The notes under the pieces were generated by a model that worked only from the letters and a program-made list of their open reading frames with translations, searched no databases and was not told the origin of the DNA. A stretch of 63,677 nt of DNA, counting the filler, from Octopus bimaculoides (taxonomy: Eukaryota): the NCBI RefSeq assembly GCF_001194135.2. It is 6 parts of 6 records of this genome, joined end to end, with 100 filler letters (N's around TTAATTAATTAA, not from the genome) between each part and the next. Parts side by side here need not be neighbours in the genome. Positions count along the whole stretch, not along the records: positions 15,544 to 46,919 come from NC_068995.1; 5 more parts are not named here. One strand, given 5' to 3'. This document shows, piece after piece, positions 1,204 to 63,095 of the stretch (positions within the stretch are counted from its first letter, which is position 1; the number at the start of each line of letters is the position of its first letter). The position numbers and the translations under genes were made by a program.

Positions 1204-1920
1204 AAAGGTAGGGAATGGCAGGGAAACATCAATGCATAAGGTGGCGGAGAAGAGGGAGAGGTAGAGATAGAAAGAGAAAGAGAGAGTATAAGGAAAGTAT
1301 GTAAATTAAGGAGGAAGAGCATTATAGGAATGTATATTAATAGGGGAGAGAGAAAGGGACACAGAGAGAGAGAGAGTAAAAGAGAGAAAGAAAGAGAGGT
1401 AGGGAATGGCAGGGAAACATCAATACATGAGGTGGCGGAGAAGAAGGAGAGACAGTGATAGAGAGAGAAAGAGGGAGTATAAGGCAAGTAAGTAAATTAG
1501 GGAGGAAGAGTATTATGGGAATGTATATTAACAGGGGAGAGAGAAAGCGAGTGAGAGAGAGAGAGAGAGAGAGGAGGAAAGGTAGGGAATGGCAGGGAAA
1601 CATCAATGCATAAAGTGGCGGAGAAGAGGGAGAGGCAGTGATAGAGAGAGAAAGAGAGAGTATAAGGTAAGTAAATTAGGGAGGAAGAGCATTATAGGAA
1701 TGTATATTAATAGGGGAGAGAGAAAGGGACAGAGAGAGGGAGAGAGAGAGCGAGAGAGAAGGAGAGGTAGGGAATGGCAGGGAATCATCAATGCATAAGG
1801 TGGCGGAGAAGAAGGAGAGACAGAGATAGAAAGAGAAAGAGAGAGTATAATGTAAGTAAGTAAATTAAAGAGGAAGAGCATTATAGGAATGTATATTAAT
1901 AGGGGAAAGAGAAAGGGAGA

Positions 1921-1964
<44 letters not shown>

Positions 1965-2725
1965 GAGGAGGAAAGGTAGGGAATGGCAGGGAAACATCAA
2001 TGCATAAGGTGGCGGAGAAGAAGGAGAGACAGTGATAGAGAGAGAAAGAGAGAGTATAAGGCAAGTAAGTAAATTAGGGAGGAAGAGCATTATAGGAATG
2101 TATATTAATAGGGGAGAGAGAAAGGGACAGAGAGAGAGAGAGAGAGAAAGAGAGAGGGAGAGAAGGAAAGGTAGGGAATGGCAGGGAAGCACCAATGCAT
2201 AAGGTGGCGGAGAAGAAGGAGTGACAGTGATAGAGAGAGAAAGAGAGAGTATAAGGTAAGTAAGTAAATTAGGTAGGAAGAGCATTATAGGAATGTATAT
2301 TAATAGGGAGGGAGAAAGGGACAGAGAAAGAGAGAGAGAGAGAGAGAGGGAGAGAGAAAGAGAGAAATAGAGAGAGAGAAGGAAAGCTAGGGAATGGCAG
2401 GGAAACGTCAATGCATAAGGTGGCGGAGAAGAGGGAGAGACAGAGATAGAGAGAGAAAGAGAGAGTATAAGGTAAGTAAATTAGGGAGGAAGAGCATTAT
2501 AGGAACGTATATTAATAGGGGAGAGAGAAAGGGACAGAGAGAGGGAGAGAGAGAGAGAGAGAGAGAGAAGGAAAAGTAGGGAATGGCAGGGAAACATCAA
2601 TGAATACGGTGGCGGAGAAGAGGAAGCGACAGAGATAGAGAGAGAAAGAGAGACTATAAGGTAAGTAAGTAAATTAGGGAGGAAGTGTATTATAGGAATG
2701 TATATTAATAGGGGAGAGAGAAAGG

Positions 2726-2764
<39 letters not shown>

Positions 2765-2922
2765 TGGTAGGGAATGGCAGGGAAACATCAATGCATAAGG
2801 TGGCGGAGACGAAGGAGAGACAGAGATAGAAAAAGAAAGAGAGAGTATAAGGTAAGTAAATTAAGGAGGAAGAGCATTATAGGAATGTATATTAATAGGG
2901 GAGAGGGAAAGGGACAGAGAGA

Positions 2923-2963
<41 letters not shown>

Positions 2964-3125
2964 AAAGGTAGGGAATGGCAGGGGAACATCAATGCATAAA
3001 GAGGCGGAGAAGAAGGAGAGACAGAGATAGGGAAAGAAAGAGAGAGTATAAGGTAAGAAAATAAATTAGGGAGAAAGAGCATTATAGGAATGTATATTAA
3101 TAGGGGAGAAAGAAAGGGACAGAAA

Positions 3126-39281: not shown

Positions 39282-39694
39282 TATGAATATGCTTGAAATA
39301 TATGACTTTCCGAGTATGGCATGTCCATTCTGCCGCAAATTTCATTTGATCGCCAGTTGGTTGTTAGAGATTCCTTCCCAAACAGCGGGAGGAGACCCTG
39401 CAGGTATTCATCAATTCAGAAATTTTATCTAAAATTGCGAACGGCTACAGTAAAATGCTATACCTCGCTGAATGGCTGATATTTTCCTTCCGGGGCTATA
39501 CACGTACAGAGTTCTGCATGTTCTTGAAAGCGGAACACCTCTAAGATTAACGCTTTCAATATTTCTGTTTTTGCTATATATTGACTTGGTGGTTCTCGCA
39601 TAACCATTTAGCAGGTACGATGAGGTCTATGTCCCACTGAAAAATTGCATGTATATCTAAGCATAGCCGATGTATTTTTCGAAACACTGAAAGT

Positions 39695-39918
39695 AATACA
39701 GATTTCAACTTCTGGCACATGGCCAGCAATTTCAATAGAGTAGGGAGTCGGTTATATCGACCCCCATCTCCAGTACACAACTGGTATTTATTTTATTAAC
39801 CCCGAAAGGATGAAAGGTAAAGTCTACCTCGGCAGAATTTGAACTCAGAACATAGGCACGGACGAAAGGCTGCTGAGCTTTATGCCCGGCGTGCTAACGA
39901 TTCAACCAACTCGCCGCC

Positions 39919-39920
<2 letters not shown>
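39695..39920 (-). mobile_element. tRNA-derived SINE family B, intact (unoccupied) copy
   Basis: Minus strand: GGCGGCGAGTTGG ... GTTAGCACGCCGGGC ... GAGTTCAAATTCTGCCGAGGTAGACTTTACCTTTCATCCTTTCGGGG. The central segment resembles the MetaSINE Meta domain from memory (unverified). Confidence 0.9.
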
Positions 39921-39967
<47 letters not shown>

Positions 39968-39974
39968 CAGTTTT

Positions 39975-40165
39975 TTTTCTGCTCTAGGCACAAGGCCCGA
40001 AATTTTGGGGGAGGTGGCCAGACAATTAGATCGATCGCTGTATGAAACTGGTACTCAATTTATCGACTCCGAAAGGATGGAAGGGAAAGTCGACCTCAGT
40101 GGAATTTGAACTCAGAACGTAAAGACAGACGAAATACAGCTAAGCATTTCGCCTGGCGTGCTAAT
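39975..40165 (-). mobile_element. SINE family B, intact copy showing the empty target ATGCTTAGCTGTATTTCGTCTGTC
   Basis: Reverse complement reads TGGCAGAAACATTAGCACGCCAGGCGAAATGCTTAGCTGTATTTCGTCTGTCTTTACGTTCTGAGTTCAAATTCC ... CCTTGTGCCTAGAGCAGAAAAAA. Confidence 0.92.
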
Positions 40166-40359
40166 GTTTCTGCCAATAATAATAAATATCTTAATGCTAT
40201 AAACAGTATTGTCTTTTATATTCGCGCAAATAACATTTAAAAGAACTTTATTCACCGAAACATTTCTAATTTTGTACACCAGCTAGTCTATGTTATTGTA
40301 TATTTACTAAATAATTCTCTCATCGTTATTTCGATGAAAACAATGAAGTATAAAGTTTT

Positions 40360-41633: not shown

Positions 41634-41686
41634 AGGCAGCGAGGTGGCAGAAACGTTAGCACGCCGGTCGAACTGCTTAGCGGTAT
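41634..41686 (+). mobile_element. SINE family B, left half (A box), ending at target-site duplication CGGTAT
   Basis: AGGCAGCGAGGTGGCAGAAACGTTAGCACGCCGGTCGAACTGCTTAGCGGTAT matches the family B head and stops abruptly. Confidence 0.9.
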
Positions 41687-43315
41687 AACTGCTCTGTGAA
41701 TTATTGTGAACACTGTTGTGTTGCTTTGTGAAAAACTGTCTCGGTGAATAATTGTGATTTTTGTGGAATTATTACGGTTGCATTTCACGTGAGCTGCTAC
41801 ATTTCCCCCAGCTATGGCAAGTGGTAGTGTCTCCAGTATGGAGAGCTACGCCAAGGCCACTGCGGCGAGGAAGCCAGTGACGCTAGAAACCAAGTTGATC
41901 AAGTTGGATATGGAGGAGGTGACCAGAAGCAGGAATTTGATAGAAGTTGAGGGAGACTCATACAAATTGTGCCCCCCCCCCAAAAAAAAAGAGACAAAAG
42001 AAAACAAAATTCTGAGGACAGTTGTGTATCGTACACAGGCTGTCGAAACTTGTAAAATTGAAATGGTGACGGAAGAGGAAATCGAGGAGTGCCTGGGTGA
42101 AATTGTGAATGAAGCCACGTACATCAGCAGAGGAAGAAAGTTCGGTACGGTAGAGGTGAGGTTCGCCACTATAGAAGAGGCAACCAAGCATGCGACCAGC
42201 ATTTTAAGAAGTGCAAAAATAGCATTGCTACCAAGTTATAGAAGAAGTGTGAAAATACGTATTCNNNNNNNNNNNNNNNNNNNNNNNNNNNNNNNNNNNN
42301 NNNNNNNNNNNNNNNNNNNNNNNNNNNNNNNNNNNNNNNNNNNNNNNNNNNNNNNNNNNNNNNNNNNNNNNNNNNNNNNNNNNNNNNNNNNNNNNNNNNN
42401 NNNNNNNNNNNNNNNNNNNNNNNNNNNNNNNNNNNNNNNNNNNNNNNNNNNNNNNNNNNNNNNNNNNNNNNNNNNNNNNNNNNNNNNNNNNNNNNNNNNN
42501 NNNNNNNNNNNNNNNNNNNNNNNNNNNNNNNNNNNNNNNNNNNNNNNNNNNNNNNNNNNNNNNNNNNNNNNNNNNNNNNNNNNNNNNNNNNNNNNNNNNN
42601 NNNNNNNNNNNNNNNNNNNNNNNNNNNNNNNNNNNNNNNNNNNNNNNNNNNNNNNNNNNNNNNNNNNNNNNNNNNNNNNNNNNNNNNNNNNNNNNNNNNN
42701 NNNNNNNNNNNNNNNNNNNNNNNNNNNNNNNNNNNNNNNNNNNNNNNNNNNNNNNNNNNNNNNNNNNNNNNNNNNNNNNNNNNNNNNNNNNNNNNNNNNN
42801 NNNNNNNNNNNNNNNNNNNNNNNNNNNNNNNNNNNNNNNNNNNNNNNNNNNNNNNNNNNNNNNNNNNNNNNNNNNNNNNNNNNNNNNNNNNNNNNNNNNN
42901 NNNNNNNNNNNNNNNNNNNNNNNNNNNNNNNNNNNNNNNNNNNNNNNNNNNNNNNNNNNNNNNNNNNNNNNNNNNNNNNNNNNNNNNNNNNNNNNNNNNN
43001 NNNNNNNNNNNNNNNNTGATAAGGACAGAAATAACAATGGTTAATGGGAGAAAGGTAACGCGAGTGTTTGAATATTTTGAGTTATAAAACCGTTAAAATG
43101 TTTACATGACGTTGAACGTAAAAGTGAAAAACTGGATAAATGTAACCACCCGACTTCGGGGATCGAGTGGACATTGCGCCTCATTTTTTTTTCATTCTTG
43201 CATATTATCATTTTATTTTAATTACCCCGATTTTATGTTTGCGTTTTGTACTGACTTTATGTTTTGTGTTGTCTTAAAAATTCTTTGTATAGCCCTTTAT
43301 GGGTAATAAAGAAAT
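41687..43315 (+). mobile_element. Tx1/L1-like non-LTR retroelement inserted into SINE B (5' UTR, ORF1, gap, 3' end AATAAAGAAAT)
   Basis: Flanked by CGGTAT at 41681-41686 and 43316-43321; AATAAA at 43305-43310. The SINE sequence resumes in register after the duplication. Confidence 0.8.
41814..42264 (+). CDS. ORF1 (RRM-like nucleic-acid-binding protein) of the Tx1/L1-like element; continues into the N gap
   Basis: 150 uninterrupted, non-low-complexity codons. N-terminal SYAKA motif and an RRM-like segment (LRTVVY ... EEEIEECL ... GTVEVRFATIEEA) resemble L1/Tx1 ORF1 proteins. Confidence 0.7.
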
Positions 43316-43353
43316 CGGTATTTTGTCTGTCTTTATGTTCTGTGTTCAAATTC
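43316..43353 (+). mobile_element. SINE family B, right-half stub (through the B box)
   Basis: CGGTATTTTGTCTGTCTTTATGTTCTGTGTTCAAATTC continues the consensus from 41686. Confidence 0.88.
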
Positions 43354-43354
43354 A

Positions 43355-43535
43355 TGATCTTAAGATTGTAGTTTCGATTCGTGAACCGGGCGGAACGTTG
43401 TATTCTTAAACAGACACTTCATCTCACGTTGCTCCACGATAGATTAGCGTCCCATCCAGGTGGGATGAGGAGATATATACGCTTCAAATCCGGAAAACCA
43501 GACTTATGAACTTATGGCTCGGGAAGGACCTTTTC
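43355..43535 (+). mobile_element. SINE family D (CORE-like), lacking its 5' start
   Basis: GTTTCGATTC (B-box-like), then GTTGTATTCTTAAACAGACACTTCATCTCACGTTGCTC, similar to 29470-29752. Confidence 0.6.
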
Positions 43536-43902
43536 CTCCTTATTTTAATATATGTATGTATGTATATATATACGTTTGCGCGCGCGCGTGTTTGTGAGTG
43601 TGCGTGTGTATGCGTGTGTGACTGTATAAACTGTTTCAGAGTGTAACTCTATCAACTTCTTTATGCGTATATGTATCTATTTTTTGTGTATGTATGTATA
43701 TGACTGCGTTATTCTATGTATTTGCGTCAGTGTGCATCTGTATATGTAAGTATGTATGTCTGTATATTTAGGTAAGCATGTACGTATGTATGTGTGTGTG
43801 TGTGTGTGTATGCATGTATTATGTATGTCCTTATCCTTCTACATGTGTTTGTGAATGTGCGTGCATGTATGTGTGCGTATATAAATATGACTGTACGTGT
43901 TT

Positions 43903-62964: not shown

Positions 62965-63095
62965 CGGTGGGCCAGTACATTCGTTAGCACGCCGGGCTAT
63001 ATTTCATCTTAACGATATTTCATCCGTCTTCAAGTTCTAAGTTCAAAATCTGCCGAGGTTTGCTTTGCCTTTCATACTTTAGGGGCCAATAACAT
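62965..63095 (+). mobile_element. SINE family B, decayed, target site unoccupied
   Basis: GTTAGCACGCCGGGC ... TTAACGATATTTCATCCG ... AAGTTCAAAATCTGCCGAGG ... GCCTTTCATACTTTAGGGG. Confidence 0.8.

What the first reader, a model, noticed from the sequence alone, without database searches (positions are those of the whole stretch)
41634..43353. Tx1/L1-like retroelement splits a SINE between its Pol III A and B boxes, with a clean CGGTAT target-site duplication
Seen: the SINE B head (41634-41686) ends at ...CTTAGCGGTAT. An unrelated 5' UTR and ORF1 follow, then a 3' end AATAAAGAAAT, and the SINE resumes at CGGTATTTTGTCTGTC...GTTCAAATTC (43316-43353). Intact copies in the same window (39975-40165, 39695-39920, 62965-63095) show the empty site. 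Established: several Tx1-clade elements are sequence-specific (Tx1L into Tx1D DNA transposons, Keno into U2, Mutsu into 5S, Dewa into tRNA tandem-array spacers, Kibi/Koshi into microsatellites). Inference: this lineage uses an abundant SINE as a renewable safe-harbour target, and each insertion breaks that SINE's internal promoter.
Basis: partly seen in the sequence, partly recalled or inferred. Interest (0 to 1): 0.88.

Follow-up and report, generated by a model that had tools for sequence, protein, structure and literature searches.

The report
Octopus retroelement inserted in a SINE head
A short LINE-derived retroelement of an octopus genome sits inside the front part of a SINE with a clean 6-base target duplication; a few relatives elsewhere also abut this SINE head, which hints at, but does not prove, targeted insertion.

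Summary
A SINE head stops at 41686 and resumes at 43316, with CGGTAT on both sides. With one CGGTAT copy removed, the joined halves align without a gap to an intact copy at 40175-40102.

The insert is a non-LTR retroelement of an octopus-only family. Left of the gap it has a 127-nt 5'UTR and 150 open ORF1 codons. Right of the gap it has a 299-nt 3'UTR that aligns with the 3'UTRs of relatives.

One relative, in O. vulgaris, is a full-length 5.3-kb LINE. Its ORF2 has endonuclease, reverse transcriptase and zf-RVT domains and is collinear with human L1 ORF2p. That places the family in the L1/Tx1 group; the Tx1 clade itself was not tested.

Contiguous relatives of 1.55-1.8 kb carry ORF1 only. The assembled 1629-nt insert therefore probably hides no ORF2 and is a HAL1-like non-autonomous element.

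Site-specificity is only partly supported. SINE-head sequence follows four of 12 relatives' 3' ends (three independent events), and it starts at different head positions. Most relatives lie head-to-tail with each other, and one has a non-SINE flank.

Tx1 lineages that target other transposons are already known.

The parts
41634..41686 (+). 5' part of the interrupted SINE head (head positions 1-53). It includes an A-box-like TAGCACGCCGG at 41657-41667.
   Evidence: 88% identity to the intact copy at 40175-40134 and 86% to 39920-39886. Box assignment comes from a motif scan only. Rfam and ARAGORN find no tRNA likeness.
41681..41686 (+). Left copy of the target-site duplication, CGGTAT.
   Evidence: Read directly. 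The SINE alignment overlaps here.
41687..41813 (+). 5' UTR of the inserted element (127 nt).
   Evidence: No match to the SINE. It shares motifs, seen by eye, with the 5' UTRs of relatives in L007 and L010; the multiple alignment itself is noisy.
41814..42264 (+). ORF1, first 150 codons, open into the gap. By eye it has an N-terminal region and an RRM-like beta-alpha-beta part (no RRM domain was detected by any tool). It contains a C10A9 homopolymer at 41972-41990.
   Evidence: ORF listing. 86% and 84% identical to O. bimaculoides proteins P0001 and P0003, which go on to a CCHC zinc knuckle. 148 relatives were found; every member that carries a name is from Octopus.
42265..43016 (.). Assembly gap (752 N, length estimated) inside the element. 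It should hold the rest of ORF1.
   Evidence: One search lists the N run. With this length the element is 1629 nt, matching contiguous ORF1-only relatives of 1.55-1.8 kb.
43017..43315 (+). 3' part of the element. It may begin with a remnant of the ORF1 segment that precedes the zinc knuckle (RTEITMVNGRK). The 3' UTR follows, with a hairpin-like CCACCCGACTTCGGGGATCGAGTGG at 43146-43170 and AATAAA at 43305-43310. It ends in GAAAT with no poly(A).
   Evidence: Aligns with the 3' UTRs of L003, L007, L008, L005, L001 and L002. A profile of the terminal 60-odd nt finds it at E 1e-6. The remnant match to P0003 is weak, with 47 of 2000 shuffles as good. The hairpin's energy signal is weak.
43316..43321 (+). 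Right copy of the target-site duplication, CGGTAT.
43322..43353 (+). Rest of the SINE head (head positions 54-85), with a B-box-like GTTCAAATTC at 43344-43353.
   Evidence: 91.7% identity to the intact copy at 40137-40102. Motif scan.
43354..43540 (+). Sequence that follows the head. It is either the body and tail of a different SINE family sharing this head, or unrelated DNA.
   Evidence: No similarity to the bodies of the two intact copies or to anything else in about 95 kb of octopus DNA held.
39965..40176 (-). Intact SINE copy that shows the empty site.
   Evidence: Gap-free alignment across the insertion point.
39690..39921 (-). Second, more diverged intact SINE copy that shows the empty site.

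Best explanation
An octopus non-LTR retroelement of the L1/Tx1 type inserted by target-primed reverse transcription into the head of a resident SINE, in the same orientation as the SINE. It is most likely a non-autonomous, roughly 1.6-kb version that keeps only ORF1 (an RNA-binding protein that carries a CCHC zinc knuckle in relatives) and the family's 3' UTR.

Inferred steps of insertion:
- The bottom strand was nicked between ...CTTAG and CGGTAT.
- The top strand was nicked six bases further on.
- Fill-in gave the CGGTAT duplication.
- The endonuclease and reverse transcriptase would have come in trans from a full-length relative such as the 5.3-kb element seen in O. vulgaris.

The insertion separates the SINE's A-box-like and B-box-like motifs by 1.6 kb, so that SINE copy can no longer be transcribed as a unit. 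This consequence is inference.

The lineage shows a recurrent physical association with this SINE head, which fits a regional preference for it. A single fixed target site is not shown, and head-to-tail joining with other copies is the commoner context among relatives.
For: Insertion and duplication.

Retroelement identity:
- ORF1 is 84-86% identical to O. bimaculoides CCHC proteins, with zf-CCHC in P0001 and P0003.
- The 3' UTR aligns with relatives, including the terminal ...CCCTxxTGGGTAATAAAGAAAT.
- The related L001 unit has ORF1 (39% identical) plus a 1132-aa ORF2 with Exo_endo_phos, RVT_1 and zf-RVT. That ORF2 matches human L1 ORF2p over residues 3-868 at E 2e-71.
- Among the recently active LINE families tabulated for O. 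vulgaris, L1-Tx1 is the only L1-group superfamily; L1-Tx1 is also listed for coleoids.

ORF1-only form:
- L003 element B is contiguous, about 1.56 kb, runs from ORF1 to the same 3' end, and has no ORF2.
- L005, L007, L008, L010 and L013 are similar, and none of L003-L013 gives a tblastn hit with ORF2.
- The gap estimate gives 1629 nt for the window's element.

SINE association:
- SINE-head sequence follows the 3' end in L004 (head positions 16-63, score 43 against a shuffle mean of 16 and SD 2.6), L007 (17/17), L010 (homologous to L007) and L013 (head positions 38-93, score 62).
- Every significant SINE-head match in the non-window loci lies at an element end.
Against: - The window holds only one copy.
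- No endonuclease or reverse transcriptase lies in the piece, and the gap hides the middle of the element.
- In relatives the SINE piece starts at head positions about 15-16 or 38, not 48, so there is no common cut site.
- In L004, L007 and L010 the SINE piece is followed by the next element's 5' UTR, and it has diverged together with that UTR. It may therefore belong to the downstream unit (5' transduction or template jump) rather than mark a DNA target.
- L003 element B has a non-SINE 3' flank. L001, L002, L005 and L008 are head-to-tail arrays with no SINE sequence.
- The Logan contigs come from one run series of unknown species.
- SINEs cover about 12% of an octopus genome.
Confidence: 0.6

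Rival explanations
1. Chance nesting. The element has no preference for the SINE and landed in one of the very many SINE copies.
For: SINEs are about 11.6% of the O. vulgaris genome and the largest repeat class in O. bimaculoides. There is one copy in the window. L003 element B has a non-SINE flank, and most relatives abut other elements. Junction positions on the SINE differ.
Against: There are three further independent cases of SINE-head sequence exactly at element ends. No significant SINE-head match lies elsewhere in about 48 kb of relatives' loci. My rough estimate for that arising by chance is below 1 in 1000.
Confidence: 0.3
2. A full-length autonomous LINE lies here, and its ORF2 (about 3.5 kb) is hidden because the gap length is underestimated.
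For: The gap length is only an estimate. A full-length 5.3-kb relative exists.
Against: Contiguous ORF1-only relatives of 1.55-1.8 kb exist, and the estimate fits them. The first codons after the gap weakly resemble the ORF1 segment before the zinc knuckle (RTEITMVNGRK against RTLIVVVEGRK), not an ORF2 end.
Confidence: 0.2
3. A chimeric retrocopy. Reverse transcriptase switched between SINE RNA and element RNA, so no resident SINE was cut.
For: In L004, L007 and L010, SINE-head pieces starting at head position about 15 are attached to the 5' UTRs of elements that sit directly after another element's 3' end. That pattern fits template jumps or co-transcription.
Against: In the window the SINE is complete on both sides, with a 6-bp overlap typical of a staggered cut. 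Two switches at exactly matching SINE positions would be needed.
Confidence: 0.07
4. Scaffolding artefact. The contigs left and right of the gap come from different loci.
For: The piece has 16 gaps, counting the two linker runs at its edges. If the family really were site-specific, junctions from different loci would look alike.
Against: The SINE halves are complementary with an exact 6-bp overlap. Orientation and module order match contiguous relatives.
Confidence: 0.03

Closest known systems
Tx1-clade LINEs that prefer other transposons as targets: Tx1L in the Tx1D piggyBac element, crocodilian Tx1-Mar in Mariner-N4_AMi, and Tx1-8_Crp and Tx1-4_AMi in LTR elements (Kojima 2015, PMC4494074)
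   Same: The element is an L1/Tx1-type retroelement found inside another repeat family in a fixed orientation with a short duplication. That paper also discusses the idea that transcription depends on the flanking target.
   Different: The candidate target here is a SINE head, which none of the papers I found reports. A preference is not demonstrated. Junction positions vary. The copy is probably ORF1-only. Clade membership is untested.
HAL1 (half-L1) of mammals, a non-autonomous L1 derivative encoding only ORF1p (PMC5753468)
   Same: ORF1 and the 3' end are kept and ORF2 is lost. It is presumably mobilised in trans by a full-length relative.
   Different: The host is a cephalopod. ORF1 is of a type that carries a CCHC zinc knuckle in relatives, which I recall human L1 ORF1p lacks. 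The element has no poly(A) tail and a conserved 3' UTR. ORF2 loss is shown in relatives but hidden by the gap in this copy.
Keno (U2 snRNA genes), Mutsu (5S rRNA genes) and Dewa (spacer of tRNA-Leu genes) in zebrafish (PMC3706591; PMC4494074)
   Same: All use a multicopy, Pol III-type or small-RNA-related sequence as a harmless landing place.
   Different: Those have one defined site shared by essentially all copies. Here only a minority of 3' junctions touch the SINE head, and at different positions.
Human LINE-1 ORF2p (PDB 8sxt, 8uw3 and others)
   Same: The ORF2 of the full-length octopus relative is collinear with it from the endonuclease through the reverse transcriptase (E 2e-71).
   Different: This concerns a relative, not the window's copy. 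The octopus ORF2 also has a C-terminal zf-RVT domain. The ORF1 type differs.

Membership tests
Non-LTR retrotransposon of the L1/Tx1 group | ORF2 with an apurinic-type endonuclease followed by reverse transcriptase and a C-terminal zinc-binding motif | not testable with these tools
   No such ORF lies in the piece, and the middle of the element is a gap. The feature is met in the related O. vulgaris unit L001, which is linked to the window by ORF1 (39% identity, E 3e-12) and by 3' UTR similarity.
Non-LTR retrotransposon of the L1/Tx1 group | ORF1 with an RNA-binding domain and CCHC zinc knuckle | tested here: inconclusive
   The window has the N-terminal 150 codons with no Pfam hit. The knuckle would fall in the gap. 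It is present in 84-86% identical proteins P0003 and P0001.
Non-LTR retrotransposon of the L1/Tx1 group | Insertion with a target-site duplication and no terminal repeats | tested here: met
   6-bp CGGTAT duplication. The ends AACTGC... and ...GAAAT are unrelated.
Tx1 clade | Reverse transcriptase groups with Tx1 in a phylogeny | not tested
   No RT lies in the window, and no named Tx1 references appeared among the hits. The only indirect support is that octopus repeat annotations list L1-Tx1, and one search's table of recently active families shows no other L1-group superfamily.
Sequence-specific LINE | Most copies share the same target sequence and cut position at the 3' junction | tested here: not met
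   Of 12 other 3' junctions of relatives, 4 (3 independent) are followed by SINE-head sequence, starting at head positions 15-16 or 38. The window's starts at 48. The rest are followed by other elements or unrelated DNA. The sample is small and is not the window's own family.
HAL1-like ORF1-only non-autonomous LINE derivative | ORF1 and LINE 3' end present, ORF2 absent | tested here: inconclusive
   Met in contiguous relatives (L003 element B; also L005, L007, L008, L010, L013). In the window the gap prevents proof, but the estimated length of 1629 nt fits.
tRNA-derived SINE (SINE2) | Head recognisable as tRNA-like, with Pol III A and B boxes | tested here: inconclusive
   ARAGORN finds nothing. 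Rfam finds no tRNA match even at E 10. Motif scans find A-box-like TAGCACGCCGG(G) (one mismatch to the loose consensus in the intact copies, two in the split copy) and B-box-like GTTCAAATTC, 52 nt apart. The literature classes octopus SINEs as tRNA-Core or tRNA-Deu.

The most novel reading that the evidence does not exclude
Octopuses may carry a lineage of ORF1-only (HAL1-like) L1/Tx1-type retroelements that preferentially enter the head of an abundant SINE. These would then spread together with the SINE's first part, from head position about 15 up to the entry point. In effect they would borrow the SINE's transcription start and build head-to-tail arrays. That would be a LINE derivative parasitising a SINE, the reverse of the usual dependence.
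Probability: 0.2. Interest if true: 0.7.

Novelty: new member of a known kind. Interest (0 to 1): 0.42.

Why it matters
Nested repeat insertions are routine in a genome that is two-thirds repeats, so the locus alone is ordinary. A real preference for a SINE head would add a SINE to the list of safe-harbour targets used by Tx1-type elements. It would also give a case where a LINE derivative disables, and perhaps exploits, SINE copies. ORF1-only LINE derivatives outside mammals would show that the HAL1 route to non-autonomy is general. Both points can be settled cheaply from the existing chromosome-level octopus assemblies.

Tried and rejected
- Pfam on the 150-aa ORF1 fragment gave no hit.
- Exact look-ups of the closest proteins (P0001, P0002, P0003) in the contig index found nothing on record, so no second genomic copy of the window's own family could be fetched. 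A protein search with P0003 returned only old O. bimaculoides models without contigs.
- A metagenome scan with ORF1 motifs found no relative. A scan with the 22-nt junction string gave one hit, which by my reading of its translation is a chance match inside a bacterial dapB-like gene.
- L002, from the O. bimaculoides chromosome assembly, is one-third N and added only one head-to-tail junction.
- The 24/27 similarity between the element's 3' UTR (43244-43270) and the SINE just downstream of the insertion (43321-43346) looked significant at first, with 0 of 2000 shuffles as good. The motif TTTATGTTTTGTG is conserved in relatives' 3' UTRs, and this SINE copy owes its match to C-to-T changes. I treat it as coincidence.
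- I considered LTR and DNA-transposon readings. The ends are neither TG...CA nor inverted repeats, so I rejected them.
- I considered a processed pseudogene of a host gene. The 148 relatives, the tandem units and the LINE-type 3' UTR reject it.
- Names of ORF2 homologues did not separate Tx1 from L1.
- The species of the SRR118693xx runs could not be found in the literature.
- The Rfam miRNA hits across the piece are low-complexity artefacts below the gathering scores.

Full report
**Observation**

A SINE head runs from 41634/41635 to 41686 and ends ...GCTTAGCGGTAT. Unrelated sequence begins at 41687. It ends ...GGGTAATAAAGAAAT at 43315, and the SINE resumes at 43316 with CGGTATTTTGTCTGTC...GTTCAAATTC (to 43353).

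An intact copy on the minus strand (40180-39965) matches 41645-41686 with its positions 6-47, and 43318-43353 with its positions 44-79. When the two halves are joined with one CGGTAT removed, they align without any gap to 40175-40102 (89.2% over 74 nt) and to 39920-39835 (76.7%). The duplicated string is exactly six bases, because the flanking bases differ on both sides.

This is a true interrupted SINE with a target-site duplication.

**The gap**

The 752 N (42265-43016) lie inside the insert. Frame continuity cannot be known. The ORF that starts at 41814 is open for 150 codons up to the gap. After the gap all three frames stop within 1, 9 and 23 codons.

Three things indicate that both sides belong to one element:
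- The SINE halves complement each other exactly.
- The left side is the 5' UTR plus the start of ORF1, and the right side is a 3' UTR of the same repeat superfamily (below).
- Contiguous relatives have the same modules in the same order within 1.55-1.8 kb. The window's element measures 1629 nt with the estimated gap.

**What the insert is**

The 150-aa fragment has no Pfam hit. It is 86% and 82% identical to two proteins, one of them an Octopus bimaculoides 'CCHC-type domain-containing protein'.

A full HMMER scan of 1.84 billion representatives gave 148 relatives. Every member that carries a name comes from O. bimaculoides, O. vulgaris or O. sinensis. The rest come from Logan assemblies of one run series. 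P0003 (453 aa, 84% identical) shows the whole protein, read by eye from its sequence: an N-terminal region, an RRM-like part, a middle part and a lysine/glutamate-rich tail; Pfam detects only a CCHC zinc knuckle.

One relative, P0024 of O. vulgaris (39% identical), could be fetched with its chromosome context as locus L001. ORF1 there is followed by a 1132-aa ORF2 with Exo_endo_phos, RVT_1 and zf-RVT domains. That ORF2 aligns with human LINE-1 ORF2p over residues 3-868 at E 2e-71. The unit is 5.28 kb and occurs at least three times head-to-tail at 99.1-99.6% identity.

The unit's 3' end (...CCCCTTGTGGGTAAATAAAATAAAA) resembles the window's (...CCCTTTATGGGTAATAAAGAAAT). The window's 43100-43315 aligns along its length with the 3' UTRs of six relatives. 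A profile of the terminal 60-odd nt finds the window's end at E 1e-6.

The insert is therefore a non-LTR retroelement of the L1/Tx1 architectural group. Among the recently active LINE families tabulated for O. vulgaris, L1-Tx1 is the only L1-group superfamily, and L1-Tx1 is also listed for coleoids. This makes 'Tx1-like' reasonable. I could not test clade membership, because there is no RT in the window and no named Tx1 references appeared among the hits.

**Probably ORF1-only**

In L003 (3310 nt), element B runs from about 1500 to 3062. It has a 5' UTR, ORF1 with its knuckle, an A-rich stretch, the family 3' UTR and the end ...GGGCCCTAATGGCTAATAAAAGAAAT. It has no ORF2.

L005, L007, L008, L010 and L013 show the same compact units. 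tblastn with the L001 ORF2 finds nothing in any of L003-L013.

The first codons after the window's gap (RTEITMVNGRK) weakly resemble the ORF1 segment just before the knuckle (RTLIVVVEGRK in P0003). Shuffles matched this score 47 times in 2000. This would put both gap edges inside ORF1, but it is weak evidence.

I therefore read the window's copy as a HAL1-like non-autonomous element, with about two-thirds confidence. HAL1 is the known mammalian precedent (PMC5753468).

**Is the SINE a preferred target?**

The window has a single copy, and about 12% of an octopus genome is SINE. The window alone therefore proves nothing.

I could not fetch other copies of the same family. I could examine 12 other 3' ends of relatives.

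SINE-head sequence follows the 3' end directly in four of them:

| Locus | Head positions | Evidence |
|---|---|---|
| L004 | 16-63, with two small deletions | score 43 against a shuffle mean of 16 (SD 2.6) |
| L007 | 15-31 | 17 of 17 identical |
| L010 | homologous to L007 | degenerate |
| L013 | 38-93, running to the contig end | score 62 |

All significant SINE-head matches in about 48 kb of non-window loci lie at element ends. By my rough arithmetic that is very unlikely by chance.

Several points argue against a fixed target:
- The positions differ from the window's (48).
- L007 and L010 are one event, not two.
- In L004, L007 and L010 the SINE piece is followed by the 5' UTR of the next element and has diverged together with it. 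It may be part of the downstream unit. Possible causes are co-transcription from the SINE start, 5' transduction or a template jump.
- L003 element B has a plain non-SINE flank.
- L001, L002, L005 and L008 are head-to-tail arrays with no SINE sequence.

The commonest neighbour of these elements is another element. A single fixed target site, the defining trait of sequence-specific LINEs, is not met in this sample. A regional preference for the SINE head remains plausible.

**The SINE**

ARAGORN and Rfam do not see a tRNA in the head. Motif scans find an A-box-like TAGCACGCCGG (41657-41667) and a B-box-like GTTCAAATTC (43344-43353), 52 nt apart in the uninterrupted head. The insertion falls between them.

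That the insertion disables Pol III transcription of this copy is a sound inference, but it is not shown.

Downstream of 43353 the sequence differs from the bodies of both intact copies and has no other copy in my data. 'SINE B' as a family is therefore unverified.

**Comparison with known systems**

The same literature already describes Tx1 families that prefer other transposons: Tx1D, Mariner-N4_AMi and LTR elements. It also describes dependence on flanking transcription. I found no report of a SINE as the target.

If confirmed, this would be a new member of a known kind. The more unusual possibility is that ORF1-only elements travel with the SINE's 5' part and so parasitise a SINE. That deserves a genome-wide look.

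**Verdict**

The retroelement and insertion reading is right in kind. The clade is unproven. The copy is likely ORF1-only. SINE targeting is suggestive only.

Noticed in passing
L001 4445-19184 (O. vulgaris OX597840.1): At least three head-to-tail full-length LINE units with a period of about 5278 bp, 99.1-99.6% identical. Each junction keeps a similar 11-13-nt string: the left flank reads AACCCGACAGG and the junctions read CACTGATAAGG and AACACCCGATAGG. This could reflect repeated insertion at one site or unequal crossing-over. The right end of the array is lost in a 100-N gap.
   Followed up: partly
L003, L004, L005, L007, L008, L010, L013 (Logan SRR118693xx) and L002 9675-10393 (O. bimaculoides chromosome assembly): ORF1-only units of 1.1-1.8 kb lie head-to-tail with 0-50 nt between the 3' end of one and the 5' UTR of the next. 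L003 also has a 50-nt 3'-end fragment wedged between two units.
   Followed up: partly
L004 45-79; L007 581-597; L010 18-33: The SINE-head pieces between units all begin at head position about 15-16. That is near where the intact copy at window 40176 starts (position about 13). They end where the next 5' UTR begins (positions 63, 31 and 31). This would fit transcripts that start at the SINE's own start site.
   Followed up: partly
window 43244-43270 against 43321-43346: 24 of 27 bases match between the element's 3' UTR and the SINE just past the insertion point, with 0 of 2000 shuffles as good. The motif is conserved in relatives' 3' UTRs, so this is probably coincidence rather than captured target sequence.
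   Followed up: yes
window 43146-43170: A hairpin-like inverted repeat (CCACCCGA...TCGAGTGG) whose sequence is conserved in the 3' UTRs of L007 and L008. The folding energy is not better than shuffles in the window's copy (z -0.3) and only modestly better in L007 (z -2.4).
   Followed up: partly
window 41972-41990: A C10A9 homopolymer run inside ORF1, encoding PPPKKK. Relatives have shorter versions. It is a likely site of slippage or sequencing error that could shift the frame.
   Followed up: no
proteins P0017 and P0103 (O. bimaculoides UniProt models): Host gene models (a WD40-repeat protein and an astacin/ShK protease) contain a segment homologous to this ORF1. These are probably annotation chimeras with repeat-derived exons.
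   Followed up: no
window 43354-43540: The sequence after the B-box-like motif is unlike the other two SINE copies. It holds a second B-box-like GTTTCGATTCG about 27 nt further on. It has no other copy in the DNA I held.
   Followed up: partly
window 15544-46919: The piece is dominated by microsatellite and low-complexity DNA and has 16 N runs, counting the two linker runs at its edges. Dozens of Rfam microRNA hits (mir-297, mir-3149, mir-466 and others) fall on these tracts, all far below the gathering scores.
   Followed up: yes
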